From NCBI GenBank assembly GCA_976226885.1, contig OZ320321.1, positions 58,714,001 through 58,778,000 on the forward strand: a stretch of DNA of 64,000 nucleotides. The letters run 5' to 3'. This stretch comes from Iphione sp. A-MEVVRFRX5. Taxonomy: Eukaryota. Both the position numbers and the translations under genes were made by a program. Shown one piece after another: positions 20,511 to 61,620 of this stretch (positions are counted from its first letter, which is position 1; each line of letters starts with the position of its first letter). Below the pieces are notes generated by a model. The model was not told where the DNA came from, did not search any database, and was given only the letters and a program-made list of their open reading frames with translations.

Positions 20511-22448
20511 CCAGCAATAGCCTTAATTTTATTTGGTACTCTATCTGATGCATGTGGCAAGTTTTCCGTATCTTCTGGTATAGGTTTGTCGTCGTAACCT
20601 TATATATACCACACAAGTTGTATTTATCTGTCAGCTATTTAGAACATTTCTCTTCGGCAGTACTGTGCTGTGATGAATTATTCTTCGTCAAGTGCATGTG
20701 TCCCGAGCCTTCTTTTATAATAGAGATATTGGGCCACGTAACGATACAAATAAATGCTGAAGAGATAACGCCTAATACGTTACGTAAACCTCTTTTTTTC
20801 TTTTACATGTAGGTACTTCATAGGTGCCAGACATGGAAACCATGCTGGCCTCCAAATCATACTAATATTCTTAAAAGAATCATCTTTTGAACGACGACGA
20901 CCACCACGGGTTGCCCTGTTCTAATGAAAATATCGTGTGTCTTATGATGGCGATTATTACGACACTGAGCCTTCGTTTTACGTGGAGTGAGCTCGTTACG
21001 AGAAGATGCACTGTTTACAAAGTGCCCCCGTCTGAGGTGGGGGGGGGGGGTCTGTGGGGCGTGGCGCGCCGGCCCGCGCTGGACGGTCGGTCGGTCGGAC
21101 GGAGCGTCGCCGGTGTCAATCGACTGGCTTATCGGTTGATAATGTTGTCGGCGTTGTCTGGTCACCCCCCTCCAGGCCAGTCACTGAGATCGATCAAGGG
21201 GGGATCTTCTTTGGTGCTGCTGCCACAGACGGATGAATGATGATGCGGCGGCGGGCACACCTCCTAGCAACCAGCGTGAAACGGCCGCCAGGTATATCCA
21301 CACACCCATGTATAACGGGAGGGGGGAGGGGGGGGGAGAGCGGCCCTGCGCTAGTATATACATCTACATGTATACGGTCGTTGTGGTCACCTTGGAGCAT
21401 CCCCAGAAACAATGCTTCACTAATGCGTGCAGGTTGGGGAGGTGGAGGGTGGGGGGCCGATGGGGGAGGTTATTATATGTAGACCACGCCATGCAGCAGT
21501 ATAGAGTGACGGGCGGTTCGATATATACTAAAGTGAAGTGGAGGTAGTATGACATATAGGGTGGTGTCATATTGGTCCTCTCACTGGTCGCTCCCTTATA
21601 CAATGCCTTCTATAAATGTTGGTGAAGCAATGGAAGAAAAAACCCTGAACATATACCATGAAAAATATTGTTCATGTATTAACACGAAACGCAGGAAATG
21701 GGTCCTTATGCTGGGTGGGTGTATACGGAATCGCCTTCATCAAGGATGAGAAGCCCCGGGGGTGGGGGTGGGGTGTGGGGGGGCGTGGTAAGGAAGGGGC
21801 TGGGTGGCTGCATGGGATGCGGTGGGGGGAAATTCACCGCGGGATGTGCTGGTGTTCTTGCATAGATGGATCTGGCGTTGCTGGCGCGTCCCCCTTCAAT
21901 TATGTGCCGCAGTATAGGGATCTCCTTGAGATGTCAGGCAGCCCGCTGGACAAACCGGCACGCCAGTATTCCAACCCCCCCCCCCCCCGCTTCCCCACCC
22001 CCCGTCTCGCCGACCAGACAACAGGGCGGCTGACAGGCTCTCGGCCATCCCTTTCTTTGCGCCGCCGCCACCTCCGCCGCTGCTGCAGCAGGCATTGTCA
22101 TGTCTTGTGGGAACCGCACCTCCAGTCCCCCATTGTGTGCAGATCCGCGCTGCTGGCCGGGCGCCTTCGCTTCGCGCCTGATATAGTTATTTCTTCAGAC
22201 TCCCCAGCATTCAGAGGAGAGGCGCGGTTTTGTAGGGGGAAGGTTAAGCGTAATAAATACGATTTTTCTCCCCCAATTCGGTTACTTTTTTTTTACCTCC
22301 TCCTCCCCCGATTATTTACTTTTCCGGTACCTGTGCACACTCATTACACATATCTTTGGCATTGTGTTTATACCTCATGACATTTTGTGTACAGTTGCAT
22401 TACTTCTGCATATTTCCTTCTCTGAAAAAGATGGTGGAGAGGAGGGAG

Positions 22449-22450
<2 letters not shown>

Positions 22451-22505
<55 letters not shown>

Positions 22506-22602
22506 AGAGAGACAGAGACAGAGAAGGAGACAGTGGGAAAGAGAAAGCGATTGTGTGAGTGATTTAGTGAGTGAGGGTGAGTATGTGTGTATAATGAAGT
22601 AC
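22451..22602 (+). repeat. (GA)n microsatellite plus a ~55-bp flank shared with 55293-55344
   Basis: (GA)~26, then CGATTGTGTGAGTGATTTAGTGAGTGAGGGTGAGTATGTGTGTATAATGAAG, which recurs exactly after the gap at 55293. Confidence 0.8.
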
Positions 22603-26457: not shown

Positions 26458-26971
26458 GCAGGTTAGGCAGGTGCTTCTTAGCTGTCTGTTAGTCTACAGC
26501 CAGTTGCTCCCCACTTCCAGGCAGGTTAGGGATGCCTATCCGCTATTTGTTAGTCTACAGCCAGTTTCTCCCCCCCCCCCTTCCCGGCAGGTTGGCGACG
26601 CCTATCCACTGTCTGTTTGTCTACAGCCAGTTTCTCTCCCTTCCAGGCAGGTTAGGGATGCCTATCCACTGTCTGTTAAGTATGCAGCCAGTCTCTCTTC
26701 CTTCCTAGCAGGTTAGGGATGCTTATCCATTGTCTGTTAGTCTACAGCCAGTTTCTCCCCCTTCCCAACAGGTTAGGAACACCTATCTGCTGTCTGTTGA
26801 GTATACAGCCAGTTCCTTCTCCTTCCTAACAGGTTAAGGACACCTATCCTCTGTTTGTCAGTCTACAGGCAGTTTCTCCCTCTTCCTGACAGATCAGGGA
26901 CACCTTTCTGCTGTCTGTTAGTCTACAGCCAGTTTCTCCTCCCTCCTGGGCAGGGTAGGAACACCTATCCA
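26458..26971. repeat. Minisatellite, ~8.5 x 60-66 bp
   Basis: CAGGTTAGG...CCTATCC.CTGTCTGTTAGTCTACAGCCAGTTTCTCC units at ~26459, 26522, 26588, 26648, 26709, 26769, 26830, 26890, 26951. Confidence 0.9.
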
Positions 26972-30330: not shown

Positions 30331-32081
30331 TCCATCAGCCTCCTGTAAAACACTACAGTGTACTTCTTCATCAGCCCCCCCCCCAAAAAAAAAAAAAAAA
30401 AAAAATGTGTGTTTCTGGTAACGACCAGCCAAAACCTAGGTAGGGAGTGGGGAGATTTTTGTTTAATTTTTGTCCCACTTTTTTCCTCTGGTTTTCAATA
30501 ATAAGTAGCTTATCGCGCACCAGGAAATTGTGATCAACTGCAAGTTTCTGCCGTTAATGGCACCATTGTGATCGCAGTGCCACCTACAGGCAAGAATAGG
30601 ACCGCATTCATGGCAGGAGAGACTCCGGTGGTAAAAGGTGGGACAGGGCGCACAGGTCAGAAGCTGGACGCGTGTTTGTTGTGTGTAGCCTCTGTGCAGG
30701 TGTGAGAACGAGCCGATTGACAAATACGTACCCATGCACCTGTATACTAGATAGCTTGATGGACAATTGAAGTAGGAGGATACCACCGGCATAATTTCAC
30801 CTGGCAGTTCATGTATGATGCTTTTCGCTTTATCGTGTCAGATTCAATGTTTTTGCGCTGAGCCCGTACACAAGGCCAGTTTCGGAGCAGCTCACGTAAA
30901 GAGGGGGCCAACTTGAGTGTGGGTCAGTTTGGGTATGGTCCATCGCTACTCGAGCTTTCTTAGAGGTTCCTGGCATGCAGTGCCAGGCAGGCCGTGAGTA
31001 GCTCTGAGCGCTACCCGTCAAAGAACTTTGTAAACTTTGATATATCCTGTTCGAATAGGAGGTCATCCCTGTGAGGGCTTTGTTACTCCCGAACACCCGT
31101 CCGTGACACACAGAGAGATGGGCACCAGAAAACGCTGTGTGTCAGCGCCTGGGGGGGGGGGGATAATATCATCAGTTTGTTTTCGTGTTGTTACATTCCT
31201 GTTCGTGTATGTAGTGCAAGGCATGAATATTTCAGTGCGCCGTTTTACCATATCCTGTCCCGTTTGAATCATCGGCGAGGTAATTTGTGTCCCTTCGACT
31301 CCCCCCCCCCCCCCCAACACCACGCGTGAATAATTGATGGCGTGAAATCTGCTCGGGGCTATACATTTTGGAGTCACCAACGATTCACATATGAAGTGGG
31401 GGAGAGTGTGTCTCGCTGGTCCTCTCATCGTATAGCAGGAGCTACTCAGTGGCCTTCCACAAGGGTTAAATATGCTCCCCCCCCTCCCCACGCTCCGTCT
31501 CCATCTGCCATGCTCTCCGCTATTAGGACTTCGTTGATTTTCACCATTCATCGGAGCGGACCGAAGCCCAGAGGGTAAATTCGAGGCCAGGTTGACATAT
31601 TTGACATCGTCGTTTAAGGCTGGTTGTAGACGAGGGGGGGGGGGGAATCCACCTTTATTATACTGTCGCTACGCTGATTCTCTGTCGCTGTTGTGTGGGA
31701 AGTAACAACAGTGCGTGTAGAAGAAATACCCGGACTTTGCCCAGACTCTCTCCTAGCTAGCTGACATTTGGGGTGAATGTCATTACTGGCAAACGTCGTA
31801 ATCAGTTGACAGTCTGGTGAAAGCGGTGAACAGATCGTGCGTCTGCCCTGTTTATTTTCCTGTCGTATTTCTTTCCATTTCCCCGTCCTTTGCCGCCAGT
31901 ATGCCCTGTTATTTACCCTTCCGTTTAATTTTCTCTCTTCGATTTTGTTATCATTCTCTTTCTGCTCATCGGTTCTCTCTTTTCTCTCCTTACTCATCTC
32001 CATGCTCTTCTCTAGTGAACTACTTGTACATTCCACATCCATCTCTCTCCATCTCGTTGTGATACTGTGATTGTTTCTGCC

Positions 32082-32086
<5 letters not shown>

Positions 32087-32148
<62 letters not shown>
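32087..32148. repeat. (TC)n microsatellite
   Basis: ~31 TC units read directly. Confidence 0.95.
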
Positions 32149-32159
<11 letters not shown>

Positions 32160-32245
32160 CTCATATGTTTTCCTGTGTGTTTCCACTGTGATTCCTGGTG
32201 CCTGCCGTCTTGCCTCTCCCAGCCTACAGCATGCAGCCTCTTATA

Positions 32246-32995: not shown

Positions 32996-33141
32996 NNNNN
33001 NNNNNNNNNNNNNNNNNNNNNNNNNNNNNNNNNNNNNNNNNNNNNNNNNNNNNNNNNNNNNNNNNNNNNNNNNNNNNNNNNNNNNNNNNNNNNNNNNNNN
33101 NNNNNNNNNNNNNNNNNNNNNNNNNNNNNNNNNNNNNNNNN
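32996..33141. other. Assembly gap (N run)
   Basis: Run of N. Confidence 1.
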
Positions 33142-35172: not shown

Positions 35173-35565
35173 TTTTTCCAGTGAAATTCAAGTTTTTATA
35201 TTTTTTCCAGTGACATTCAACAGTTTGTATACTTTTTTCCAGTGACATTTACCAGTTTTTATACTTTTTCCAGTGACATTCACCAGTTTTCATACTTTTT
35301 CTGACATTTACCAGTTTTCATACTATTTTCCAGTGACATTCACCAGTTTTTATACTTTTTCCAATGACATTCACCAGTTTTTATACCTTTTTCCAATGAC
35401 ATTCACCAGTTTTATATCCATTTCCAGTGACATTTACCAGTTTTCATACTTTTTTCCAGTGACATTTACCAGTTTTTTATACTTTTTCTAGTGACATTTA
35501 CCAGTTTTTATACTTTTTCCAGTGACATTTACCAGTTTTCATACTTTTTTCTAGTAATATTCACC
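35173..35565. repeat. Minisatellite, ~13 x ~31 bp
   Basis: TTTTCCAGTGACATT(T/C)ACCAGTTTT(T/C)ATACT units. Confidence 0.9.
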
Positions 35566-38559: not shown

Positions 38560-39350
38560 GGGGCAGGTGGGGGGTACCGTAGTTCTGATTTTTTTTTTTT
38601 TTTGGGGGGGGGCATTTTTTGCTGTTCCTCTCCTGGTATCCTTACGGTGGGGAGAGTATCCCCAGTCTGATGGGTGCGGCCATTTTCGTTGCTCTTCTCT
38701 TGGTATCCTTAATACTGACTCACATTGCAAGGCCCTCATCAACAAGCAAAGACATGGTGGGGGAGGGTGAGTATCCTCGGTCCAGTGGGTGGGGCTGTTT
38801 TTACCCCTCTTCTCCTCATATCCTTACTACTGGCTCACTTTGCAAGGCCCACATCAAAGAGGTAGAAGCATGGTTAGGGAGGGGGCAGAGTATCCTCAGT
38901 CTGATGGGTGGGGCCATTTTTGCTGCTCTTTCCTGGTATCTTTACTACTGGCTCACATTATAAGGCTCTCATCAAAGAGGCATAAACGTGGTGGGGGGAG
39001 TATCCTTAGTCTGATGGGTGAGTCGTTTTTGCTGCTCCACTCCTGATATCCTTACTACTGGCTCACATTGTGAGGCCCTCATCAGAGAGGTAGAAACGTG
39101 TTTTTTTTTGGGTGGGGGGGGGGGAGAATATTCTTTGGCAGGTGGGGCCGTTTTCGCTGTGACTCTCCTGATATTCTTACTACTGACTCACATTGCGAGG
39201 CCCTCATCAAAGAGGTAGAAACATTTTTTTTTTTTGAAGGGGGGGGGGGGGGAGAATATTCTCGGTCTGGTGGGTGGGGCCGTTTTCGCCACTCCTCTCT
39301 TGATATCCTTACTACTGTCTCACATTGTGAGGCCCTCATCAGAGAGGCAA
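38560..39350. repeat. Tandem satellite, ~6-7 x 110-130 bp
   Basis: GAGTATCC..AGTCTGATGGGTG..GCCATTTT...ATCCTTACTACTGGCTCACATTG..AGGCCCTCATCA units at ~38652, 38770, 38889, 38998, 39125, 39255. Length varies through poly-G/poly-T runs. Confidence 0.88.
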
Positions 39351-39765
39351 AGATATGTCGGGTGAACAGCAAGATCGCATTGCCGTCTTCGGCGGGTCAC
39401 CTGCAGGACCATTGCCGTTGCAAGATGAGCTGGAAACACAGCTGCTGATCTTGTTCGTTCCCTTTAGCGTGTGGTTGAGGGGTGGGTGGGTGGCCGGGTG
39501 TGTGGGTGGGAGTGGGCGCTCGTACTGTTGGGCGGGGCAGACGTCTGGTGGAGAACCCCATTAGTTTAGGTGGGCATCGTGGCCGTTCACCTGTCGATGT
39601 AACCACCCGCCATCACGGTGGTTTGCTGAAAACAGGTCTGGTCGTGGTGGTGGTGGTGGTGGTGGGGGGGGGGGGCTTCCATGAACCGTGCCTTTTATTT
39701 GATTGAGTGGGCATGAGAAGGTAAGTGGGTCGGGTGCCAGTTTGATGGATGGTGATGGTACAGGC

Positions 39766-39976
39766 NNNNNNNNNNNNNNNNNNNNNNNNNNNNNNNNNNN
39801 NNNNNNNNNNNNNNNNNNNNNNNNNNNNNNNNNNNNNNNNNNNNNNNNNNNNNNNNNNNNNNNNNNNNNNNNNNNNNNNNNNNNNNNNNNNNNNNNNNNN
39901 NNNNNNNNNNNNNNNNNNNNNNNNNNNNNNNNNNNNNNNNNNNNNNNNNNNNNNNNNNNNNNNNNNNNNNNNNNNN
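39766..39976. other. Assembly gap (N run)
   Basis: Run of N. Confidence 1.
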
Positions 39977-43800: not shown

Positions 43801-44912
43801 TCTTGAAGGCTGCTCGATGACAGATAGGTGCCTGATAGATCGTCATGGCAACGGCTACCTTCCACCTTCATTGAGGGGAGGGTAGTCGCCGGGGGGAGGG
43901 GAGAGGGGGAGAGGGGGGCTGGATGTGTGGTCCAGGGTTTTATTCAGGATTCGTCTGGTATAGATGGCACTACGACCTACGGACGCCCATACCAGCGAGG
44001 GGCAATGAGTGCAGCCCAAAGCCCGGGATGTGTGGGTCGCTGGTGTCGCCCCCTGCGGGACTAGTTCACCTCGGCGGCGGCGGCGGCGGCGGCTGCCCGG
44101 GCGACTAATACCTGCCTGTGATGCTACTCCCGCTCCGCCTCCTCCTCAGGCGGATTGATACCTGTCATCTTGTTCCGCCCTTCCCTATCGATAACCTTAA
44201 GAATCCGGCGACGTGGTCCAGGCGTTAAGTCCCCGAGAGGCTTCATTCATAGCGACGACCTCATCGGTTGCGTATTGATATCACACCCAGTGAGTACGAT
44301 TTCACAGGAATCCGCCAGGAACCAGTGTACATCATGGGATAGCTCATTTTACTGAGGTCTCTTCTTTTCAGATTCCATCTGGGGTATACATGTATATGGA
44401 GCAGTGTCCTTCGCCTGGCCGTATTTCTGGAAGTATTGTTCTCATTTTCTTGATTATCGCTATTACCTTAGTGAGTTTTTTTTTCGTTAGAAGGGAACTT
44501 TAAAATGTAGCAGTGCAACCCCAGACGGTCTGACTATCCACTAAGCTAACCAACAGCCCATACAAACCTTGCAGAACAAAGCAACATACACTTGATGTAT
44601 AATTTGAGTGGATTACATTACATTGCATAGCTGCTACTGCTTGCTGCAAAAGAGTTAACATGGACTGTGCCAATTGACTTGTTTTGTTCCCCAACCATAT
44701 AGGCTAGATGGAACCCTGAAACCCATAAATTCACTTCAGAGACACTTGAAGATACTTGAAATGGTACTGTTTCGTCATACATTATTTTTTATGAAACATC
44801 TTGAGCACAGTATGTTGTCTTGACCATTGCTTGTTAACAGTACCTATATTAGAACTATTATCATATATATATTTATTGAAATCCAATGGATTCCACAAAA
44901 ATAACCCCTGAG

Positions 44913-45122
44913 AGTAGGGGAAAACTGCCGGTTCTGGACCACTTGGTGGTGGGTCCCTCCCTATACATTTCTATAGTAAAACAGCCCCACCACTTAGCCC
45001 CACCACCTGAGGTTGGTGGTGGGTCCCCGGTTATCAGGGAGGATGAGATAAGGGGTTTGACCATGGGTGCCCTTTGACCAGTAGCACAGGTAGGTAGATA
45101 TCTGCATTCAAAAACGTCACAT
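44913..45122 (+). repeat. Left terminal inverted repeat
   Basis: 44913-45101 is the exact reverse complement of the right end; after a 6-nt insertion the match continues to 45122. Confidence 0.95.
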
Positions 45123-45220
45123 TAAACTTAGATGAGGTTGTTAGTTTCATGTGTTTTGAACACATTACTCACAATGCTTACCACGTGAAGGTCACCTCAT
45201 ATCAAGCATATCCCTAACCC

Positions 45221-45295
45221 TCTACTGAGTGGGTCCACCTAATGTTTCCCCCTCATCATCTACTGAGTGGGTCCACCTAATGTTTCCCCCTCTCA
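45221..45295. repeat. 2 x 38-bp tandem repeat inside the Polinton
   Basis: TCTACTGAGTGGGTCCACCTAATGTTTCCCCCTC twice. Confidence 0.9.
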
Positions 45296-45332
45296 ACTGG
45301 AAAGTTCTACTATATACATATGTACAGCTCTT

Positions 45333-45688
45333 TTTCATCCACTATTTATCTGTGGCTTCATTGGATATAGGATATTCATCTATGACTACCAAGGCTCGTA
45401 GACACATGGCACTTTTGCATAGACTTTTTCCTATCCAGCCTATGGATGAAGTTTCATCCACTATTTATCTCTGGCTTCTGTTGGTATAGGATATTCATCT
45501 ATGACTACCAAGGCTCGTAGGCACATGGCACTTTTACATAGACTTTTTCCTATCCAGCCTATGGATGAAGTTTCATCCACTATTTATCTGTGGCTTCTGT
45601 TGGTATAGGATATTCATCTATGACTATCAAGGCTCGTAGGCACATGACACTTTTGCATAGACTTTTTCCTACCCAGCCTATGGATGAA
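45333..45688. repeat. 3 x 119-bp tandem repeat downstream of the integrase
   Basis: TTTCATCCACTATTTATCT...CCAGCCTATGGATGAA units starting at 45333, 45452 and 45571; near-identical. Confidence 0.93.
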
Positions 45689-45759
45689 AACAATCACCAA
45701 TGGTTTGTGGTAGGGACTGATGACAAATATTCTCAGCTTTCTACTGTGATATTCATCAA

Positions 45760-46824
45760 CTATACATCTCGTAGTTCTGATGCTTTTATCCACTGGTTGA
45801 ATTTGTTTGGCCAATAGAGCCATTTGACATATATCTTTTTGTTTGGACCATGACCCTTTTCTTTGATAATTTTTTCTATTTTCCACAAATCATTTTTAGC
45901 TACTTTTTGTAGCTCCTCTTGGTAGAATGTTCCAGATACCTCTTCATCCAGAAAATCAATCAATTTATAAATTGGTAGACCCTTTCTCTTAAAACGTTTA
46001 GATACTCTAAATATTTCTCCCGACCATTTTTCATCATATTCCCGACCGAATGTATTTCTTAAATGAGTGATTCTTACATAATCCCCTATCTGAAATTTGA
46101 ATTTTTTATTTGCTTTCTTGGAAAGATATGGCCAATATAGTTTCCACCACAAGGAGGTTTCGTTTTGCTTATTGACTTCCCTAGGAGTCATACCAATGTT
46201 TCTATGGTAGGTATTATTATAGCTTTCAGCCAAGTCAGGAAGAATGTTAATATATGTATAGGTTTGATTTGCAGTGAAGTATCGATAAATCTTAGATTTT
46301 ATTGTTTTGATAACCCTTTCAGCATAGTTGGCTTTAACTTCATTTTGAGTGACAAAGTGATGAACATTATATTTTTGGAATACTTTTTGAACAAGTTTGG
46401 CTTTAAATTCTTGTCCCTTGTCAGTACGCAAGTACTTTGGATGTCTACCCTCTTTAAAGATATCTTCAAAAGCCTTGGCAACTTCAGGTCCCGATTTTGT
46501 TTTAAGAGGTCTTAGCCAAAGAAATCTCGAAAATATATCAATAGCAACTAACACATAGGCATAACCTCTATTGTATTTACCAAGTCGAGAAAAGTCAATG
46601 AGATCAGCATCCCACTGGTCATCTATACCTCCAACGACTACCTTATTACGAGTAAATTTTCTATTGACTGGTTTATGCAGAGTGTAAGGTTCTTGTTTTG
46701 ACAACCAATGTTTAATCTGTTGAAAACTGTACTTACCTGCAACTGCTTTATACAGTTTTCTTGGTGAGCTGAAAGCTGCTGGATGTTTAGGATCATAATA
46801 GATGCTTGCTAAGTAATCATCCAT
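45760..46824 (-). CDS. Polinton retroviral-like (rve, DDE) integrase with C-terminal chromodomain, 354 aa
   Basis: DDE motifs QWDADLIDF, LRTDKGQEF, ANYAERVIKTIK; KFQIGDYVRI; chromodomain WKIEKII...IYVKWLYWPNKFNQWI; start context ACCATGG. Confidence 0.95.
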   Translation of the reverse strand: MDDYLASIYYDPKHPAAFSSPRKLYKAVAGKYSFQQIKHWLSKQEPYTLHKPVNRKFTRNKVVVGGIDDQWDADLIDFSRLGKYNRGYAYVLVAIDIFSRFLWLRPLKTKSGPEVAKAFEDIFKEGRHPKYLRTDKGQEFKAKLVQKVFQKYNVHHFVTQNEVKANYAERVIKTIKSKIYRYFTANQTYTYINILPDLAESYNNTYHRNIGMTPREVNKQNETSLWWKLYWPYLSKKANKKFKFQIGDYVRITHLRNTFGREYDEKWSGEIFRVSKRFKRKGLPIYKLIDFLDEEVSGTFYQEELQKVAKNDLWKIEKIIKEKGHGPNKKIYVKWLYWPNKFNQWIKASELRDV

Positions 46825-46857
46825 GGTGAGACTGAATGATTGAATAGAATTTAGGTT

Positions 46858-48234
46858 TTATATATCCTCCTCCTCAGACTCTTTCTCCTCTTCTTCTGAC
46901 TCTGAGTCATCACCCTCAAACAGGTCTTGAAACGATGATTTATGTTTCTTTAGAGCTCTTTTAATGGCTCTGGACACATCTACTCCTTTGTTGATGTATT
47001 CTTCAGCTTTGTCTAAAATATCATTAGTAGTTTTGTCGTTTCTTAGATCTATAGCCTGGTCAAGATACCTTTTGTAAATTTTGAAAAACTCTTTTTCTTG
47101 TTGCTCTTCTGCCTCTTTAGCTTCATCCCACATCCATCTAAAAGTGTCATTTTCTGTAATGTCTACATCAGAATCTTCTTCTTCAGTGTCATCATCCTCA
47201 CTCTCAACCTTAGGTTTCTTTAATGGAGGTTCCACCTCACATTTTCTTATGTGTCTGTGAAGGTCAAATAGGCTCGCATACACGAGACCGCACTCATCAC
47301 AGGGATGGAACTCTTTCCTACTACACTCCATGATGTTTACTCCTTGGCTGTCTGAATCTGACTGAGTAACCACTGTTAGTTGTGGGTCTTTTATAGGGTT
47401 TGCTAGTAGTCTGTCCCGAGGAAGCATATTAGGTTTGTTAATGACTACTAAATGTCCATAAGGAATGGAGACTGCTTCTTCATATTTGTGTAAAAGACAA
47501 TCTCGGTTTCCTGGAAACATTTGTTGTGCAATAGTATGAACCTCTTGTCTATCAGCTGGCATGTCAAAGAGTATCATGTAGTGTGAGTTACGCCTGATTG
47601 TTTTTGTCCCTGAACCAAAGAAATTTTGCATGATAGTTATGACAGATAGGTTTTGGTGATGGCTACCCCTGGTATACAGATGACTGATTCTTTGATCTTT
47701 TCCCACCTCTGTCATCAAATCATCTAATACAAGCAAATTTTTAGTGTTTGGATTGAAACACCCATCTTCTAGATCATCCGGTATGCCTTTAACAAATTCC
47801 ACCCCATCCATACACTCATACATGGGCTGCCATTGAGCATAACACCACACCACTCTTTGGGGACATGGTTGAATCCAACATAGTAGGTTTTGAATCAAAT
47901 TATTGATCCAGGTAGTCTTCCCACATTGAGTGGGCCCAGCTATCACCATGGTAAAAGGATGAGTAAATGTGACATCTGGTGTGGGTGTTTCGGGCACTGA
48001 AGCTGCAAGTGCGGGCGCTGCGGCTGCTGCGGCCGCAGGTGCGGGCGTTGCGGCCGCAGTTGCGGGCGTTGCGGCTGCTGTGGCCGCAGGTGCGGGCGTT
48101 GCGGCCGCAAGTGTGGATGTTAGTAGTTCTGCATTGTTGTGTTTGGTTGTATGATATTTTGTTAGATGACGATTGAGATCATGGCGTCTGGTGAACCCAA
48201 TGCTACAAACTTTACAAAAATGATTCTTACCCAT
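46858..48234 (-). CDS. A32/FtsK-like genome-packaging ATPase fused to C2H2 zinc fingers and an acidic helical C-terminal region (~458 aa from ATG 48234)
   Basis: Walker A GPTQCGKT, Walker B LLVLDD, RGSHH and ITIMQN motifs. C2H2 fingers CKVC...HLTKYH (N-terminal) and CDEC...HRHIRKC (post-ATPase). The track start at 48261 is TTG; the first ATG is at 48234. Confidence 0.9.
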   Translation of the reverse strand: MGKNHFCKVCSIGFTRRHDLNRHLTKYHTTKHNNAELLTSTLAAATPAPAATAAATPATAAATPAPAAAAAAAPALAASVPETPTPDVTFTHPFTMVIAGPTQCGKTTWINNLIQNLLCWIQPCPQRVVWCYAQWQPMYECMDGVEFVKGIPDDLEDGCFNPNTKNLLVLDDLMTEVGKDQRISHLYTRGSHHQNLSVITIMQNFFGSGTKTIRRNSHYMILFDMPADRQEVHTIAQQMFPGNRDCLLHKYEEAVSIPYGHLVVINKPNMLPRDRLLANPIKDPQLTVVTQSDSDSQGVNIMECSRKEFHPCDECGLVYASLFDLHRHIRKCEVEPPLKKPKVESEDDDTEEEDSDVDITENDTFRWMWDEAKEAEEQQEKEFFKIYKRYLDQAIDLRNDKTTNDILDKAEEYINKGVDVSRAIKRALKKHKSSFQDLFEGDDSESEEEEKESEEEDI

Positions 48235-48278
48235 GTTGACCGGTTGAAGTCCAAAGGGCAAATGAGAAGGAGGTTTGA

Positions 48279-51200
48279 CTATTGATATGTTTTGTAATGT
48301 CCATAAGCAAGTGTATCACACCCATTGGCTAGAATGTATCGCTTGTCATCATAGGGAGAAAGACTCGTTTTATTGAGCTTTACTGTATATAGCTCATGTC
48401 CAAAACTTCTAATCTGCATCATGCTATGACTTTGTGCCTGTTTTTGAAAGAGTGTGTCTTTGTAGTCCTGATGGGTTATGGTGTTTTTCACTACAGATTT
48501 CTTCACTCCTTTAGCAGTTTTCTTTTCTTTCCCATCATAGAGGAGGCTGTACATTTTAGAACGTAATCCAACAAACTCAGATGGAGGAACCCCAGCACAT
48601 TCATCTTTCATTTTACCCAATACCTTTTTGTTAGCATCACTATATAATGGATGGTCCTCAGGATAGTCTGATGTGTCAAAGAGATGTGCATCTTCAGTCA
48701 TGTCTTGGTAAATGTCACGGGTAGTGATTTCATAGCAAAGACTGTCTGTGTCAGTGAATAACAGTTTGGCTTGGGCCCCATACTTGGCTTTGATGTATGA
48801 ATAATGGAAATCATACATGAGTGTTTTTGACAAATCCAAAATGCTGAACCCCACATAGATAGGCTTATTGAGTTTTAACTTTGTTTTCTTCATTTGAATG
48901 GCAGTCAGATCTTCATTGAAGATTTTGAATTCATGGAAATTTGGCTTGCTTACCAGCTTCTTGACTTTTTCTTCATTATTCGCTAGTTTTACATCGACAC
49001 GTTTCCTTAGATTCTCCATAGTTTTCCCAAACACACTATTATTCATCAGTTTGAAAAAGTCTTTCTCAAAGTCATTTTTAGCCTGTTTGCGCTTTTCCGT
49101 ATTGAAATCGATGTAGGACTTTAACCAAGGGCTTTGCTCGAATGACAGCACTCTATGGACTTTGGTTACCACCAGGCCTAATGAGAGATATTGCTTGAGG
49201 TTTCTGTAGTGAACCACATAATTTGACTTTGATTGAAGGTTAGGAACCAACTTTTCAACATTTGATCCTCCCATGTCTAAAGATTGGCAATAAGGTGACA
49301 GCATGGTCTCATCAATGCTTTTACGTTCTGGGGCCAGGGGATAGTCATTGTGCATGTCGTGAAGGTGTGCTGGATAATCAAGATCAACCTCTAAGATGTA
49401 GCCTGTATCTGAATCATCAGGCACTTGGGTCACGTCCACTGGTTCAGCCCATCTAAAGCCATGAGTGGGGAGCGGTTGAGACATGGCCCACCCATAAAGA
49501 TTATTTGCATCCAAGTACATAATGTATGTGGAGGGTTTGGCGGGATCATAATTTGGAAGGTGTAGATTGTTAGCTTTGGAATACCTATTGGAAATCATGG
49601 AAATACCACCCCTAAGGCCTTTCTCTATGAACAAGTGCATGTCCAAATCAGTCAAAAGCTCTAGTCTCTGACCTGTCATTTTCATACAGGCCTGCCATGC
49701 TAGTCCAGGAGATGTGTAGAAATTGGCTGGATCTAAACCATAATATCGAAGACAAACCTGTCTAAAGTTTTCAAAGACATCAGCTAGGAGAAGCACATCA
49801 GTCAACAGATAGAGATCATGATATTGTCCAAGAGACTGAATATCAAATGTCTCCCATACTTGGCATGCATGTCGGTAATCACTGTCGGAAATGTGTTGCT
49901 CAGTGAGACTGTTGTAGAATGCCTCAGAAGGTGGTAAGACTTTATCAAAGATCTGGGGTCCATCCACATAATCATAGGGGTAAACCCCCTTTCTTAACAA
50001 GAGAGAGAGATGCTCTGTAGGGAAATGTTGACTGAGATGTGCAAATTTAGAAGGGCCTTCCTTGGCCAAGTTAGATACTAAAGCCTCGAGGGAAGAGTTC
50101 ATGAACTGCAGAGAATCAATGAAATCTAAACATCCCATTGAAAAGGAAACATATTTCTCCATGTTGTTTGGTATGCATTCCAGTTTTTTATCTGTCTTCC
50201 CAATAGCCTGCATGATGATGTGAGCATCATAGCCACGAAGATTATGAAACACCACAGGGATACGCTTTCTCAGTCTATAGTTTAAATTACACTCTTTGTG
50301 TGCAGCACCCCTGAAATCCCCAGTGATATGACAATGGTCTCTCACACGATCATCCAGCAGGTCACCCCCACAAATGTGACAAGATACAGCATCTCTGAAC
50401 TCTTTTTCATCCGTTTCAGACATTTCAAGGGGGGTTACATCTGCTAACCTATCTTTCAGGAACTCTTCGACCTGTGACATATGTTCAATGAATGTGTCAG
50501 CCACATTCTCACCTCTGTACACTACAGGTTCTTCATCTAATCCCACAATCTTATAAGCAAAACCAGAGGGAACATGGTGGGTCAACTTCTGAGTATAGGA
50601 TTCAGATGGATCAGGACTGCATGAGTCAATCTTTGTGGCAAAGCTTTCAAAATCAGCATAGACTATGAAAGGAACCTTCAGTTGTTTGGCTATGTCCCTA
50701 CCAGAGAAAGACAACCATTTATCGTTTTCAGTTGGCAATTCAATCTTCTGTGGCCCATGGATACTACAATAGGGTCTATGATCATCAAGCAGTGACTCCT
50801 TAGTAAATCCATGCAGACAGTAATCACAGAAGAAGTGCCTGTGTGTGTTACTTTTCTGGTCATTCAATAAACGATTTAAATCTTTGATCCAACAGTAATG
50901 AGAAACATCAGCACTAGCATACAGAAGACGGTTTACATGTTTTTCATGTCTTTCTTGTGTAATGTGAATTGGAAAGAGTTCCTTTTCATAACCAAACACA
51001 TTGACTGAAATCTCATTTTGTTTTTCGAATTTGGAAATATCTGTTGTCTTCACTGGATAGGATATGCTTAACATGTTAAGAGTATCTCCATACTTTTCAT
51101 ATTGGGAGACCCTATCAGAATGTGTATCTGCTGGGTACAAGGCTGATAGCACCGACCAAAGGAAACATTTATTATCATGGTTCTTGACATTGATGATAGC

Positions 51201-51905
51201 CTTCTTGTTTTGCAACTGAGGTGGTAATGGGATATATGTGGAGCCTCTTAATGGTTTATACCTGGCTATGTGAAGGGTCATATTCATCACATGATCCAAT
51301 ACCCAGTTACTCCCCTCCCTCTGATACTCAGTGAAAGATTTAAAAATCTTCTGGATAGAGGCTTGAAAACCTGACTCTATGTCCCCTTCTTTCAGGGCTA
51401 TATGACAGTGGCCTCTAAAGACAGGCTCTACAGTTTTATCCTCCTTTCTGAAGCAAACCTGTACAGACAAGTACCACTTTATCCCACCTTTAGCCAGCTC
51501 CTTTCTCAGTCTGTCCACCACCTTATCCTTATGTTTACCCAGAAATACCATCGGATCTTTTTCTTTTCCTGCTTTCAAAACAAACTTTTTCAATGATCCC
51601 CTGAGAGCTGCCCTTTCAAAAAACTCTTCACAATTTTGATCCACCTCCATAGGTTCTTCTTCCCTGTTATGTACCTTCATGTGTTTTTTAAGTACATCTT
51701 TCCTACTAAACTTCTTGTCACATATAGGACATGTATGTTTAACCTCATCGTGTGTTCTCACATGTTTAAGGAGAACATCCCTCCTCTTAAACTCCGCCTG
51801 ACAAATGGGACACTTGTATGACTCAGAATGAGACTTTAAATGCCTTACCAGATGTTTCTTGTGCTTGAAGCTCTTCTTGCATTTGGAACAATCAAATGGA
51901 TTCAT
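48279..51905 (-). CDS. Protein-primed family B DNA polymerase (group 2 type) with three N-terminal C2H2 fingers and an Endonuclease-VII-like insertion (~1208 aa from ATG 51905)
   Basis: Exo motifs YADFES, FHNLRGYD, LTDVLLLADVFENFR; pol motifs YLDANNLYG, KLMNNSVFGK, FTDTDSL; EndoVII-like CHIC...RDHCHITGDFRGAAHKECN; GSNW...LRGSTYIPLP. The track start at 52091 is GTG; the first ATG (ACCATG) is at 51905. Confidence 0.96.
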   Translation of the reverse strand: MNPFDCSKCKKSFKHKKHLVRHLKSHSESYKCPICQAEFKRRDVLLKHVRTHDEVKHTCPICDKKFSRKDVLKKHMKVHNREEEPMEVDQNCEEFFERAALRGSLKKFVLKAGKEKDPMVFLGKHKDKVVDRLRKELAKGGIKWYLSVQVCFRKEDKTVEPVFRGHCHIALKEGDIESGFQASIQKIFKSFTEYQREGSNWVLDHVMNMTLHIARYKPLRGSTYIPLPPQLQNKKAIINVKNHDNKCFLWSVLSALYPADTHSDRVSQYEKYGDTLNMLSISYPVKTTDISKFEKQNEISVNVFGYEKELFPIHITQERHEKHVNRLLYASADVSHYCWIKDLNRLLNDQKSNTHRHFFCDYCLHGFTKESLLDDHRPYCSIHGPQKIELPTENDKWLSFSGRDIAKQLKVPFIVYADFESFATKIDSCSPDPSESYTQKLTHHVPSGFAYKIVGLDEEPVVYRGENVADTFIEHMSQVEEFLKDRLADVTPLEMSETDEKEFRDAVSCHICGGDLLDDRVRDHCHITGDFRGAAHKECNLNYRLRKRIPVVFHNLRGYDAHIIMQAIGKTDKKLECIPNNMEKYVSFSMGCLDFIDSLQFMNSSLEALVSNLAKEGPSKFAHLSQHFPTEHLSLLLRKGVYPYDYVDGPQIFDKVLPPSEAFYNSLTEQHISDSDYRHACQVWETFDIQSLGQYHDLYLLTDVLLLADVFENFRQVCLRYYGLDPANFYTSPGLAWQACMKMTGQRLELLTDLDMHLFIEKGLRGGISMISNRYSKANNLHLPNYDPAKPSTYIMYLDANNLYGWAMSQPLPTHGFRWAEPVDVTQVPDDSDTGYILEVDLDYPAHLHDMHNDYPLAPERKSIDETMLSPYCQSLDMGGSNVEKLVPNLQSKSNYVVHYRNLKQYLSLGLVVTKVHRVLSFEQSPWLKSYIDFNTEKRKQAKNDFEKDFFKLMNNSVFGKTMENLRKRVDVKLANNEEKVKKLVSKPNFHEFKIFNEDLTAIQMKKTKLKLNKPIYVGFSILDLSKTLMYDFHYSYIKAKYGAQAKLLFTDTDSLCYEITTRDIYQDMTEDAHLFDTSDYPEDHPLYSDANKKVLGKMKDECAGVPPSEFVGLRSKMYSLLYDGKEKKTAKGVKKSVVKNTITHQDYKDTLFQKQAQSHSMMQIRSFGHELYTVKLNKTSLSPYDDKRYILANGCDTLAYGHYKTYQ

Positions 51906-52094
51906 GGTGACTCCTGCGATGTATGCTACGATGTTGATCCTCCGGCTGTCAGAAGTGAAATGAGGAAATATTATAAAAGAGCTTACCTTTATCGATGAAC
52001 CTATCCCAGAATCCTTTGCAAAATCTATCCCATAATTCCCTGTTGTGCAATCATCTGGGAAGTGATTGCCAAACAATTCTAAATTTTCCACTAT

Positions 52095-53090
52095 CCTGTC
52101 TGCCGCTTCCTGATTGGTGGTACGTTTTGTATTATTACAAGCACGTCAGTAATGATACAGACAAACAGATTTCAGATTTCAGAAGCCCAGAGGATCAGCT
52201 TTCTGTAGATATAAAGTTTATGAAAATAGGACAATTAGAAGTATGGTTTTTAGCTACTTTTGTACACCCACCCTACCATGTGTGTTCACTATTATCCGGT
52301 CGGCAGCATGCTGATTGGTGATACGTTTTGTGTTATTACGGGGACATCAGTACAGATACAGACAAACGGATTTCAGATTTGAAATGCCCAGGCTCTGGGC
52401 TTTTAGGAGATATAAAGTTTGTCTAGATACAATAATTAGAAATGGTCTTTCTGCCTACTTTAGCAGACCCACTATCAAATCCCAGTCAGCCACTACCCGG
52501 TCGGCCGCATGCTAATTGGCATTACGTTTTGTATTATTACGAGCATGTCACTACAGATAGAGACAAACAGATTACAGATTTGAAATGCCCAGAGTGTCAG
52601 CTTTTTGTAGATATAAAGTTTATGAACATCAGACCATCACAACTGGTCTTTCTACTCACTTTTCTAGACCCACTGTCAAACAAATTACATGGTCGGCCGC
52701 GACCCTACCGGCCGCTTGCTGATTGACGATACATTTTCTATTATTACGACTCTTACAGTAGAGATAGAAACGGATGGATTTCAGATTTGAAATGCCCAGA
52801 GTGTCAGCTTTCTGCAGATATAAAATATATGAAAATCGGATAATTAGAAGTATGCTAAATAAATTTCTTTCTAGACCCACCCTACCATGTGTGTTCACTA
52901 TTATCCGGTCAGCAGCATGCCGATCGGCGTTACGTTTTCTATTATTACGAGCACATCAGTCAAGATGCAGACAAACGGATTGCATATTTAAAGAGAGCAG
53001 GGTATCAGCATTCTGCAGATATAAAGTTTATGACAATCGGCCAAGTAGAAGTGGTCTTTCTGCCCACTTTAGTACACCTACCTTGAAACG
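52095..53090. repeat. 5 x ~201-bp diverged tandem array upstream of pPolB
   Basis: Anchor GATTGG/variants at 52112, 52313, 52514, 52721, 52922 (periods 201, 201, 207, 201). Shared TACGTTTT.TATTATTAC, GATTTCAGATTTGAAATGCCCAG and GATATAAAGTTT blocks. Confidence 0.9.
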
Positions 53091-53116
53091 TCCTTCCTCT
53101 CTGGATGCTGGTGTGC

Positions 53117-53320
53117 ATGTGACGTTTTTGAATATCTACCTACCTGTGCTACTGGTCAAAGGGCACCCATGGTCAAACCCCTTATCTCATCCTCCCTGAT
53201 AACCGGGGACCCACCACCAACCTCAGGTGGTGGGGCTAAGTGGTGGGGCTGTTTTACTATAGAAATGTATAGGGAGGGACCCACCACCAAGTGGTCCAGA
53301 ACCGGCAGTTTTCCCCTACT
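53117..53320 (-). repeat. Right terminal inverted repeat
   Basis: Reverse complement of 44913-45122 without the 6-nt insertion. Confidence 0.95.
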
Positions 53321-53463
53321 CCTGAGGATGTATGTAATTAGACCTCAGGTGCATGTTTTGAGGGGCACGTGGAGTATGTTCAGATAGACTGAATATACGT
53401 ACTAAACTGTTCCCAAGTAGTGAGCTGCCAAGAGAGGGATCGTTGTCAGGGGATGGTATTCTA

Positions 53464-55131: not shown

Positions 55132-55292
55132 NNNNNNNNNNNNNNNNNNNNNNNNNNNNNNNNNNNNNNNNNNNNNNNNNNNNNNNNNNNNNNNNNNNNN
55201 NNNNNNNNNNNNNNNNNNNNNNNNNNNNNNNNNNNNNNNNNNNNNNNNNNNNNNNNNNNNNNNNNNNNNNNNNNNNNNNNNNNNNNNNNNNN
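55132..55292. other. Assembly gap (N run), possibly a collapsed (GA)n tract
   Basis: Run of N; the right flank is identical to the sequence following the (GA)n at 22451. Confidence 0.95.
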
Positions 55293-60243: not shown

Positions 60244-61222
60244 TTCAGTTCAGTTCAAAATATTTTATTGAGCATAATAGACCCACCTGTACAGGTGTCT
60301 GACACTATACACTCATCCAAGAAACAGTACATCCAACGCGTATCGGCGGTTAAACAAAAATCTCTTAACCCTTACTGGGTCCATCTTAAATAAGCCCTTC
60401 GTAGATAATTTTTGATAAATGGACAAGGTTGTGAGATGATCTCTTTAGGAAGAGAATTCCACCTCCTAGACCCCTTGAATACAAAACTATTCAAGACAAG
60501 ATGTGTATTAGGCTTCACAACAACTAATTGAGTATTACACCCTTGCCTAGTGTTACTCACACTCTTCAACTTCCAGAAGGACAAAGACAGCATGCCTGTT
60601 AGAAGCATTAAGGTTGCATGGCATATTCGTTCTTCTAGATTTCGAATATTCTCATCAGCTATATACTTCAGTATAAATTGTTTACCAGTATATCTCCTGA
60701 AAAATAACAAACGTATTGACTTAATCCAAGCTGTTTCAAGCCTGTCTTTATCCCTCTCACACAATGAGCACAGGAAAGAGATACCATAATCCAGATGTGG
60801 AATAACATAAGCTTGATATAATTTTGATAACAGCTTATTACTCAGCAGATCCTTACTTCTAAATAATAGATAGCTAACCTTCCTTATTTTCATTATTTTG
60901 TGGTCAACCATGCTCTTAAAGAGCAATCGACTATCCAGATGAAAACCTAAAAATTGAAACAAATGCACTTGTTCCAGTATAATACCCTGAAGTGCTATGT
61001 CTAACACAAAATCTCTTGTTTTACCATAACACATAACTTTAGACTTATTCTTGTTGACAATCAAGCCATTATTTCGGCACCAATCACCAATTTTGTGAAC
61101 AGTATGTTGCATCTTTGACCGCAAGCCCAAGGCGTTCGACCCCCATGACAAGATGGTTATATCATCCGCATAAGCCAGAATTTTAGAAAGGAAAGCACAT
61201 TTAAAAATGTCGTTAATATATT
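60244..61222 (-). mobile_element. 5'-truncated CR1/L2-group LINE (C-terminal RT half, 3' UTR, tail)
   Basis: YINDI...ILAYADDITI, DWCRNNGLIVNKNKSKVM, FLGFHLD, LDYG, WNSLP, stop at 60372; AATAAA (60264-60269) then a short (TGAAC)n tail. Homology is lost just upstream of YIND. Confidence 0.88.
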
Positions 61223-61620
61223 TTGTTGCCAGTGGAGAGAACCTGGCGTTGGAATCGCCCACCTCCACCTTCTCGAAACTTCTTCGTGCCTTTCGTGATT
61301 GGGTGGGTTGGTGGGTGGGTTGGGGAAAGGTGAAAGAATGTTGGGTGGCGGCTGTATTAACAGTGACAGTCTCACCTTATAGCTCCAGATAGTCGCCAGA
61401 TGCCATCGATCTCTTCTGCAGCCCCCCCACCCACCACCACCACCACCACCACCACTCACAACCCCACATCTTCTACCTCCTTCTTCCTCCATCCCTCCCT
61501 CCACTGGAGTAATCCTGCCGTATCTGTGCCAAACCCTGGAGGCGGTCAGCGGATCTAGCAGCCAGCCCCTGTCTCTAACGTTTACCAGTCTCCAAGACAG
61601 CGAGCTCGTAGCGAGCGGCG

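What the first reader, a model, noticed from the sequence alone, without database searches (positions are those of the whole stretch)
44913..53320. Minimal capsid-less Polinton that keeps its packaging ATPase: candidate satellite of a helper polintovirus
Seen: both ends, perfect TSD, TIRs identical over 189 bp and three intact ORFs in 8.4 kb. The remaining space is repeat arrays, with no room for major/minor capsid or adenain-type protease genes. Known: canonical Polintons are ~15-20 kb and usually encode double and single jelly-roll capsids and a maturation protease as well. Inference: an intact packaging motor without a capsid suggests either hijacking of capsids from a full-length Polinton in trans (phage-satellite or transpoviron-like) or repurposing of the ATPase. 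The clean gene junctions and intact ORFs argue for a streamlined lineage rather than a random deletion. It may still be active.
Basis: partly seen in the sequence, partly recalled or inferred. Interest (0 to 1): 0.88.

Follow-up and report, generated by a model that had tools for sequence, protein, structure and literature searches.

The report
Capsid-less mini-Polinton keeping its packaging ATPase
An 8.4-kb, perfectly bounded virus-like transposon (Polinton/Maverick) of a marine-invertebrate type carries only a DNA polymerase, an integrase and a virus-type DNA-packaging ATPase and no shell genes. Such reduced forms are already on record, and whether this one borrows shells from full-length relatives is still untested.

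Summary
Window 44913-53320 is an 8408-bp element with 189-nt perfect terminal inverted repeats, a perfect 6-bp target duplication (CCTGAG), 5'-AG...CT-3' ends and three unbroken minus-strand genes. These are a protein-primed family B polymerase with three N-terminal C2H2 zinc fingers, an A32/IVa2-type packaging ATPase flanked by zinc fingers, and an rve integrase with a chromo-like tail. The remaining 2.3 kb is terminal repeats and tandem arrays, with no room for capsid or protease genes.

The ATPase domain is of the true packaging type: it passes the Pfam Pox_A32 cut-off, and its best fold matches are STIV B204 and adenovirus IVa2. It is as conserved as the polymerase and integrase cores (69-82% identity) in four related lineages. 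In three other assemblies the three genes co-occur in many copies.

The "satellite" reading is not shown. Loss of one block next to the polymerase would give this layout with clean junctions. Capsid-less, ATPase-positive Polintons are already tabulated (P_Pd1.1, P_Gi1.2).

Verdict: a real, young, intact reduced Polinton. It is a new variant of a known kind, of moderate interest.

The parts
44907..44912 (.). Left copy of the 6-bp target-site duplication (CCTGAG)
44913..45101 (.). Left terminal inverted repeat, 189 nt, starting 5'-AG. It holds a 15-nt motif twice (70 nt apart) and an 11-nt motif twice.
45212..45287 (+). 38-nt direct repeat, 2 copies, 92% alike. Each copy carries the heptamer GTGGGTC that also occurs in the TIR.
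45333..45689 (.). 119-bp tandem array, 3 units 93-95% alike, downstream of the integrase stop
45760..46824 (-). Integrase gene, 354 aa, unbroken. The rve core is at 46348-46596 and a chromo-like C-terminal tail at 45766-45885.
   Evidence: Pfam rve 5.7e-12, above cut-off; Chromo weak at 0.011. Relatives 71-77% identical over 100% of the length, and most of them carry PF00665+PF00385.
46858..48234 (-). ATPase gene, 458 aa, unbroken (the ORF is open up to 48261). Layout: N-terminal C2H2 finger (about 48145-48216), Ala/Pro/Thr-rich linker, ATPase domain (47347-47994), second C2H2-like finger (about 47239-47301), acidic stretch, helical part, acidic tail.
48005..48113 (-). In-frame tandem repeat (21-51-bp periods) that encodes the Ala/Pro/Thr-rich linker of the ATPase. 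This linker is the least conserved part of the protein.
48279..51905 (-). [quoted passage not shown] It has three C2H2 fingers at 51657-51902, then the long N-terminal region that stands before the exonuclease and polymerase parts (TP and vOTU domains in polinton polymerases; not tested here), and an endonuclease-VII-like insert at 50283-50387.
52088..53082 (.). 201-bp tandem array, 4.9 units only 65-77% alike, between the polymerase start and the right TIR. Three units carry GTGGGTC on the minus strand.
53132..53320 (.). Right terminal inverted repeat, 189 nt, ending CT-3'
53321..53326 (.). Right copy of the target-site duplication (CCTGAG)

Best explanation
This is a young, structurally complete but reduced Polinton/Maverick of the adintovirus-related clade that is common in molluscs and cnidarians.

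Shown: it keeps the whole replication and integration set, namely the zinc-finger-bearing protein-primed polymerase, the rve integrase with a chromo-like tail, perfect TIRs and a 6-bp TSD. It also keeps a packaging-type ATPase. It lacks every shell gene.

Inferred from what is established for Polintons: the polymerase copies the linear element by protein priming from the TIR ends, and the integrase inserts the copy and makes the 6-bp duplication. The copy is thus self-sufficient for spread within a genome.

My commitment on the ATPase: it is still a DNA-packaging motor. Its sequence is kept by selection acting in the clade as a whole, which I expect to include capsid-encoding members. This copy would then be a derivative that lost the shell-gene block lying beyond the polymerase's 5' end, where the 201-bp array now stands. 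Because it has kept its ends, its subterminal repeats and its own motor, it could form particles only with shell proteins supplied by a co-resident full-length relative. It is helper-dependent by construction, but it is not shown to be a specialised satellite.

Rough odds: identity as a reduced Polinton 0.9; derivative of a capsid-encoding clade rather than an old stand-alone three-gene lineage about 0.5.
For: Identity:
- TIR, TSD and termini as described.
- Polymerase relatives 52-78% identical, found in molluscs and cnidarians, plus a spider adintovirus PolB at 47% identity.
- 15 of 23 relatives hit PF03175 and 23 of 24 aligned sequences hit Endonuclease_7.
- All columns that are invariant in the polymerase alignment are kept in the window's protein. 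By my reading of the sequence they include the Exo I-III and Pol A-C motifs.
- Integrase rve domain above the Pfam cut-off.

ATPase type:
- Pox_A32 25.6 bits against a cut-off of 22.8. 43 of 52 relatives hit Pox_A32 and 22 hit Adeno_IVa2.
- Domain model with pLDDT 92.4.
- Best PDB folds are the STIV/STIV2 B204 packaging NTPases (E 1e-6, TM 0.55-0.62).
- Best viral folds are adenovirus IVa2, A32-like ATPases of giant viruses, an adintovirus FtsK-like protein, and the mavirus and Sputnik ATPases.
- The invariant Walker A and B residues are present.

Constraint: ATPase-domain identity to four related lineages is 76, 82, 82 and 69%. The figures are 75, 79, 80 and 72% for the polymerase exo-pol part and 75, 77 and 79% for the integrase core.

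Youth: the TIRs are 100% identical over 189 nt, while the 201-bp units are only 65-77% alike.

No shell genes: only 2.3 kb is non-coding and all of it is repeats.

One-block loss is enough: a relative's ORF (P0123) joins the polymerase's N-terminal part in frame to the ATPase. The polymerase-then-ATPase order therefore also holds in a relative, as it does in adenoviruses (established knowledge).
Against: - No capsid-encoding sibling was seen. The window holds no second copy and no recognisable capsid or protease ORF, though Pfam is weak on Polinton capsids.
- In three other assemblies, polymerase, ATPase and integrase clusters of matching identity sit on the same contigs and in near-equal numbers (3/3/4, 11/12/15 and 30/26/31 members). 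That pattern would also fit an old, stable three-gene lineage.
- The array that fills the place of the presumed lost block is old and diverged.
- Two capsid-less, ATPase-positive Polintons of 10.8 and 11.0 kb are on record, so the state may be recurrent or stable.
Confidence: 0.5

Rival explanations
1. Specialised satellite lineage. A stable three-gene Polinton lineage has given up shell genes for good and relies on capsids of full-length Polintons in the same host. Its own zinc-finger-bearing ATPase would recognise the element's subterminal repeats and load its DNA into the borrowed shells.
For: - The ATPase domain is as conserved as the polymerase and integrase cores in four lineages.
- The three genes co-occur on the same contigs, in near-equal copy numbers, in three other assemblies.
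- The whole ATPase architecture (finger, linker, ATPase, finger, acidic, helical, acidic) is conserved.
- The heptamer GTGGGTC is over-represented: 19 in the window against 6.8 +/- 2.5 expected. Nine sit mirror-symmetrically in the two terminal regions, inside three different repeat families.
- The repeat arrays are much older than the insertion.
- Precedents by analogy (established knowledge): adenovirus IVa2 binds repeated packaging motifs near one genome end; transpovirons arose by loss of the structural module; phage satellites keep packaging-specificity genes.
Against: - No helper is known and the relatives' gene content is unknown.
- Zinc-finger-decorated ATPases are a trait of a large part of the family: 87 of 153 representatives carry a C2H2-like pattern. 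They are therefore not a mark of the capsid-less state.
- The layout is reachable by a single block deletion.
- At 8.4 kb the element is about half the usual genome length, and it is unknown whether such capsids accept that.
Confidence: 0.25
2. Capsid-independent role. The element is a purely intragenomic self-synthesizing transposon, and the ATPase has been recruited to replication or integration. It might act as a DNA translocase or as a target-handling partner of the DDE integrase, in the way MuB, TnsC or IstB ATPases serve other DDE transposases.
For: - The ATPase sits between polymerase and integrase on the same strand, with spacers of 33-44 bp.
- It carries DNA-binding fingers and a conserved C-terminal extension that short canonical ATPases of about 210-290 aa lack.
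- Conservation without any shell gene in the element.
Against: - Fold and family are those of packaging motors, with no closer match to transposition ATPases.
- The polymerase-ATPase adjacency is also the adenovirus arrangement, so position says little.
- No such role is known for any A32/IVa2-type ATPase.
Confidence: 0.15
3. Chance or assembly artefact: the inverted repeats and ORFs do not bound a real mobile element.
For: None found. The window does hold four N runs, but all lie outside the element.
Against: - A 189-nt perfect TIR, a 6/6 TSD and the family-typical AG...CT ends.
- Three full-length genes whose relatives number in the thousands.
Confidence: 0.01

Closest known systems
Polintons/Mavericks of animals (Orthopolintovirales; adintoviruses, Alpha PolB class)
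   Same: Protein-primed polymerase of the PF03175 family with a long N-terminal region, rve integrase with a chromo-like tail, A32/IVa2-type ATPase, long TIRs, 6-bp TSD and AG...CT ends. The nearest proteins are in molluscs and cnidarians, with a spider adintovirus PolB at 47% identity.
   Different: No major capsid, penton or protease gene. The size is 8.4 kb, against 10.3-49 kb in the 72 elements tabulated by Krupovic et al. 2014. Three C2H2 fingers precede the polymerase and fingers flank the ATPase; I found no paper that describes this.
P_Pd1.1 (Platynereis dumerilii, 10,777 bp) and P_Gi1.2 (Glomus intraradices, 11,019 bp)
   Same: Both are scored MCP-negative, penton-negative, protease-negative and ATPase-positive in Table S1 of PMC4028283. 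This is the same gene-content state, and P_Pd1.1 is from a marine lophotrochozoan.
   Different: I know them only from the table. Their sequences were not compared, and their intactness, ends and relation to this lineage are unknown to me. The source paper (Pritham et al. 2007) is not held.
Capsid-less Polinton derivatives that also lost the ATPase (for example Polinton-1N1_DR, Polinton-2N1_DR, Polinton-1_TV)
   Same: Loss of the morphogenetic genes inside the Polinton frame. Nine of the 13 MCP-less elements lost ATPase and protease together.
   Different: Here the ATPase is kept, intact and conserved.
Adenovirus IVa2 with its repeated packaging motifs (established knowledge)
   Same: The same ATPase fold family, the gene placed next to the polymerase on the same strand, and repeated short motifs near the genome ends.
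   Different: Binding of this ATPase's fingers to the GTGGGTC-bearing repeats is only my inference. Adenoviruses encode their own capsid.
Transpovirons and phage satellites (P4, PICI)
   Same: These are capsid-less replicons that travel in a helper's particles. Transpovirons arose by loss of the structural module.
   Different: The hosts, the replication proteins (pPolB-S1H in transpovirons) and the helpers all differ. No helper is known here. The likeness is functional, not one of family membership.

Membership tests
Polinton/Maverick | [quoted passage not shown] | tested here: met
   The window's protein itself misses PF03175 at E<=10. However, 15 of 23 relatives at 52-65% identity hit it (best 1.5e-19). 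A named adintovirus PolB is 47% identical over 93% of the length. All invariant alignment columns are kept. A PDB sequence and profile search found no polymerase.
Polinton/Maverick | Retrovirus-like (rve) integrase | tested here: met
   PF00665 at 46.2 bits against a cut-off of 32.6. The chromo tail is weak in the window's protein (E 0.011) but scored in most relatives.
Polinton/Maverick | Long terminal inverted repeats, 6-bp target-site duplication, 5'-AG...CT-3' ends | tested here: met
Polinton/Maverick | Major (double jelly-roll) and minor capsid genes and an adenain-type protease, present in most members | tested here: not met
   Only 2.3 kb is non-coding, and all of it is TIRs and tandem arrays. 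ORFs there have no Pfam match. These genes are typical but not defining: 13 of 72 tabulated Polintons lack the MCP.
A32/IVa2-type (FtsK-HerA) genome-packaging ATPase of double jelly-roll viruses | Family profile match, Walker A and B motifs, and the fold of a solved packaging NTPase | tested here: met
   Pox_A32 25.6 bits against a cut-off of 22.8, and 43 of 52 relatives also match. The invariant G-K and D-D residues are kept. The model has pLDDT 92.4. B204 is the top PDB fold match and IVa2 and A32-like proteins top the viral library.
A32/IVa2-type (FtsK-HerA) genome-packaging ATPase of double jelly-roll viruses | Acts on a capsid encoded by the same genome | tested here: not met
   There is no capsid gene in the element.
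Adintovirus Alpha PolB class (OTU domain plus pfam03175 polymerase) | N-terminal OTU-like protease domain before the polymerase | not tested
   The class is defined in PMC8502044 and PMC11161782.
Satellite or helper-dependent element | A capsid-encoding helper in the same host that shares cis signals | not testable with these tools
   The window holds one copy and no helper. The host genome is not at hand, and the window's exact proteins are not in the protein collection.
Satellite or helper-dependent element | The element's DNA is found inside particles | not testable with these tools
   This needs particle-enriched sequence data from the host.
Streamlined three-gene lineage | The same three-gene layout between TIRs in several genomes | tested here: inconclusive
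   The three genes co-occur on the same contigs in three assemblies, judged by contig-length fingerprints. What else lies in those elements is unknown, because the loci were not fetched (referred).

The most novel reading that the evidence does not exclude
A stable, multi-species lineage of three-gene Polintons in marine invertebrates acts as a true satellite of capsid-encoding Polintons. It replicates and integrates on its own. It uses a zinc-finger-guided packaging ATPase and mirror-symmetric subterminal GTGGGTC-bearing repeats to load its DNA into a helper's shells. This would be the first satellite-helper pair among virus-like elements of animals in this virus realm.
Probability: 0.2. Interest if true: 0.85.

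Novelty: new variant of a known kind. Interest (0 to 1): 0.45.

Why it matters
Polintons are thought to sit on a continuum between virus and transposon. Krupovic et al. 2014 read the joint loss of capsid, protease and ATPase genes as a concerted loss.

An intact copy that dropped the shell genes but keeps a packaging motor as well conserved as its polymerase is the informative intermediate. Either the motor has a use without its own shell (piracy of a relative's capsid, or a new role), or such copies are short-lived offshoots of full-length elements.

The three-gene set recurs in several invertebrate assemblies. The question can therefore be settled by comparative sequence work alone.

Tried and rejected
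- Pfam on the window's polymerase: no PF03175 match even at E<=10. Resolved through the relatives.
- PDB sequence search with the polymerase alone and with a 24-sequence profile: only zinc-finger noise, no polymerase.
- PDB sequence search with the ATPase, alone and as a profile: only generic P-loop matches at E>0.004. The fold search was needed.
- Full-length ATPase homologue search: swamped by low-complexity and zinc-finger words, only 5 hits. A domain-only search of every representative replaced it.
- Full-length ATPase structure from a 9-sequence alignment: pLDDT 37.8 and unusable, so the N- and C-terminal extensions stay uncharacterised.
- PHROGs: nothing for the ATPase.
- Cluster look-ups gave no organism names for the nearest relatives, so the host species is not identified. 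The named relatives are molluscs and cnidarians.
- Pritham et al. 2007 is not held. Searches for 'minimal', 'reduced' or 'non-autonomous' Polinton and for Polinton plus C2H2 found no description of this layout.
- Capsid queries were not run. The only capsid sequences I saw listed are in a paper's supplement. Using them would mean pasting sequences of virus-like elements of animals that have no reference, so I left this out.
- Rejected: a larger nested element with shell genes outside the TIRs. ORFs within 10 kb on either side have no Pfam match, and the TSD directly abuts the TIRs.
- One remark on my own conduct. While reading I noted to myself that some relatives' copies carry substitutions in catalytic motifs.
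Full report
**1. The observation**

Between 44000 and 54300 there is one inverted repeat of 30 nt or more. Its arms are 44912-45101 and 53132-53321, 190 nt long and 100% complementary. It is also the longest in the whole window.

Read base by base, the element runs from 44913 to 53320 (8408 bp). It begins AGTAGGGG and ends CCCCTACT. The TIR is perfect for exactly 189 nt. CCTGAG stands on both sides, at 44907-44912 and 53321-53326.

All three large ORFs lie on the minus strand. With the first ATG as start they are:
- polymerase 51905-48279, 1208 aa;
- ATPase 48234-46858, 458 aa;
- integrase 46824-45760, 354 aa.

None has an internal stop. The spacers are 44 and 33 bp, and 6069 of the 8408 bp are coding. 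No gene of the element is broken: zero stops, zero frameshifts.

The window holds no second copy or fragment of the element. Four N runs lie elsewhere in the window and were left alone.

**2. The non-coding part**

On the left, 847 bp hold the TIR, a 38-nt repeat in 2 copies (45212-45287) and a 119-bp array of 3 units (45333-45689, 93-95% alike). On the right, 1415 bp hold a 201-bp array of 4.9 units (52088-53082, only 65-77% alike) and the TIR.

ORFs in these stretches match no Pfam family, and Rfam finds nothing. A major capsid gene alone needs about 1.5 kb, so there is indeed no room for shell or protease genes.

ORFs within 10 kb on either side of the element also have no Pfam match. The other recognisable genes of the window are retroelement parts.

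**3. The three proteins**

*Polymerase.* Residues 64-145 of the ORF are three C2H2 fingers. An endonuclease-VII-like insert lies further in.

The window's own sequence does not reach Pfam PF03175 or any solved polymerase by sequence. Its relatives nevertheless place it:
- There are 1046 hits. The best are 76-78% identical over the full length, and named ones come from Gigantopelta, Haliotis, Mytilus, Pinctada, Pecten, Dendronephthya and Actinostola.
- A spider adintovirus PolB is 47% identical.
- 15 of 23 relatives match PF03175 (best 1.5e-19), and 23 of 24 aligned sequences match Endonuclease_7.
- All invariant alignment columns are kept in the window's protein. By my reading of the sequence these include the exonuclease I-III and polymerase A-C motifs.

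Many relatives also carry the N-terminal fingers.

*Integrase.* The rve domain is above the Pfam cut-off and a weak chromo-like tail follows. Relatives are 71-77% identical over 100% of the length.

*ATPase.* Cut out as a 216-aa domain, it passes the Pox_A32 cut-off (25.6 against 22.8 bits). 43 of 52 relatives match Pox_A32 and 22 match Adeno_IVa2.
- The family is large: 6606 representatives at E<=0.001.
- A model of the domain is confident (pLDDT 92.4).
- Its best solved-structure matches are the B204 genome-packaging NTPases of STIV and STIV2.
- Its best matches among viral models are adenovirus IVa2, A32-like ATPases of giant viruses, an adintovirus FtsK-like protein, and the mavirus and Sputnik ATPases.

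It is longer than the canonical form of about 210-290 aa. An N-terminal finger and an Ala/Pro/Thr-rich linker (encoded by an in-frame tandem repeat) come before the ATPase domain. A second finger, an acidic stretch, a helical part and an acidic tail follow it. The nearest relatives share this whole architecture.

A full-length model failed (pLDDT 37.8).

Finger-decorated ATPases are common in this branch of the family. 87 of 153 representatives have a C2H2-like pattern and 68 are 400 aa or longer. The fingers are therefore not a mark of the capsid-less state.

**4. Is the ATPase decaying?**

I compared the window's proteins with four related lineages. Within each lineage the genes were paired by shared contigs. 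Identity of the ATPase catalytic domain is 76, 82, 82 and 69%. The polymerase exonuclease-polymerase part gives 75, 79, 80 and 72%, and the integrase core gives 75, 77 and 79%.

Only the linkers and extensions are looser, at 48-58%.

This is protein-level evidence only. Even so, it does not fit a relic under relaxed selection along the history of these lineages.

**5. Relatives elsewhere**

The window's exact proteins are not in the protein collection.

The cluster look-ups give contig lengths, which serve as fingerprints.
- In one assembly the polymerase, ATPase and integrase clusters (3, 3 and 4 members) all sit on the same three contigs.
- In a second (11, 12 and 15 members) four contigs hold all three genes and six more hold two.
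- In a third (30, 26 and 31 members) three contigs hold all three and eight more hold two. Only 15 members per cluster were listed.

Many members are fragments, so most copies there are decayed. Six polymerases of the second lineage are full length.

One relative's ORF (P0123) joins the polymerase's N-terminal part in frame to the ATPase, through one internal deletion. This shows that the polymerase-then-ATPase order holds there too.

The three genes thus travel together, in many copies, in at least three other genomes. What I cannot say is whether those elements also carry shell genes.

To see that, I would have had to fetch their DNA. The operators bar fetching a virus of animals by accession, pattern or look-up, and I could not tell whether integrated adintovirus-like copies in other animal genomes fall under that bar. 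I left the step out and referred it.

**6. How it most likely works**

Shown: the parts needed for self-synthesizing transposition are all present and intact.

Inferred from established Polinton biology: protein-primed copying starts from the TIR ends, and the integrase inserts the copy with a 6-bp duplication.

The insertion is young. There are zero differences in 189 paired positions. By a simple Poisson bound this means less than about 1.6% divergence between the arms.

The 201-bp units differ by 23-35%, so the array was part of the element long before this insertion.

Polymerase followed by the packaging ATPase on one strand is the arrangement of adenoviruses (pTP, Pol, IVa2; established knowledge). 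Loss of one block beyond the polymerase's 5' end, where the 201-bp array now lies, would leave these three genes untouched.

I therefore commit, at about even odds, to this reading. The copy is a derivative within a clade whose ATPase is kept by selection for packaging. It spreads inside the genome on its own, and it could reach a particle only with shell proteins from a co-resident full-length relative.

The specialised-satellite reading (0.25) and a capsid-independent role for the ATPase (0.15) remain open.

**7. A possible cis signal**

The heptamer GTGGGTC occurs 19 times in the window, against 6.8 +/- 2.5 expected.

Nine of these lie in the element's two terminal regions and are mirror-symmetric. 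On the plus strand at the left there are two in the TIR and two in the 38-nt repeat. On the minus strand at the right there is one in each of three 201-bp units and two in the TIR.

These copies are not independent events. Even so, three different repeat families share the core.

Both the polymerase and the ATPase carry C2H2 fingers, so a protein-DNA code at the ends is a reasonable idea. It is untested.

**8. What is known**

Krupovic et al. 2014 found the MCP intact or fragmented in 59 of 72 Polintons. They noted that nine MCP-less elements had also lost the ATPase and the protease.

Their Table S1 lists two elements with the ATPase only: P_Pd1.1 of the annelid Platynereis (10,777 bp) and P_Gi1.2 of Glomus (11,019 bp). 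The smallest complete element in that table is 10.3 kb.

The gene-content state is therefore on record, although I found no paper that discusses it. I found none that mentions zinc fingers on Polinton polymerases or ATPases either.

Bivalve genomes are reported to be very rich in Polinton-type regions.

**9. Verdict**

The element is a real, young, intact, reduced Polinton with a genuine and conserved packaging-type ATPase. The satellite interpretation is possible but unsupported by direct evidence, and the state has precedents.

I rate it a new variant of a known kind, interest 0.45. The question it raises can be answered by comparative sequence analysis alone.

Noticed in passing
window 44949-45273 (+) and 52466-53284 (-): The heptamer GTGGGTC is enriched (19 in the window against 6.8 expected). 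Nine copies sit mirror-symmetrically in the element's two terminal regions, inside the TIR, the 38-nt repeat and the 201-bp units. It may be a binding site for the zinc-finger-bearing proteins.
   Followed up: partly
window 48005-48113: An in-frame tandem repeat (21-51-bp periods) encodes the Ala/Pro/Thr-rich linker of the ATPase. This linker is the one part with no detectable similarity to relatives.
   Followed up: partly
window 15067-17712 (-): An 881-aa ORF with endonuclease (Exo_endo_phos_2) and reverse transcriptase domains: an apparently open LINE-type retrotransposon gene.
   Followed up: partly
window 18945-19370 (-): A 141-aa ORF with a clear NADAR domain (2e-24) lies just upstream of the LINE-type ORF, between two unassigned ORFs (17903-18508 and 19473-20510). 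A NADAR domain inside or beside a retroelement is unusual.
   Followed up: no
window 60372-61268 (-): A 298-aa ORF carries the C-terminal part of a reverse transcriptase domain: a fragment of a second retroelement.
   Followed up: no
window 26481-26970, 35191-35549, 38646-39392: Three further tandem arrays (units of about 61-121, 31 and 115-130 bp), unrelated to the element's arrays.
   Followed up: no
window 22426-22550 and 32080-32171: A pair of short-period repeats that match each other in inverted orientation, 9.5 kb apart (many overlapping pairs, 81-97%). It may be low-complexity sequence or the ends of another element.
   Followed up: no
window 13582-13715, 32996-33141, 39766-39976, 55132-55292: Four runs of N, all outside the element. 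They were left as they are.
   Followed up: no
protein P0123 (relative): In a related genome one ORF joins the zinc-finger and N-terminal part of the polymerase in frame to a complete ATPase (one internal deletion). A derivative that dropped the polymerase core but kept the ATPase open.
   Followed up: partly
protein P0434: An integrase relative (51% identity) is filed under 'Solemya velum gill symbiont'. It is most likely DNA of the bivalve host in a symbiont assembly.
   Followed up: no
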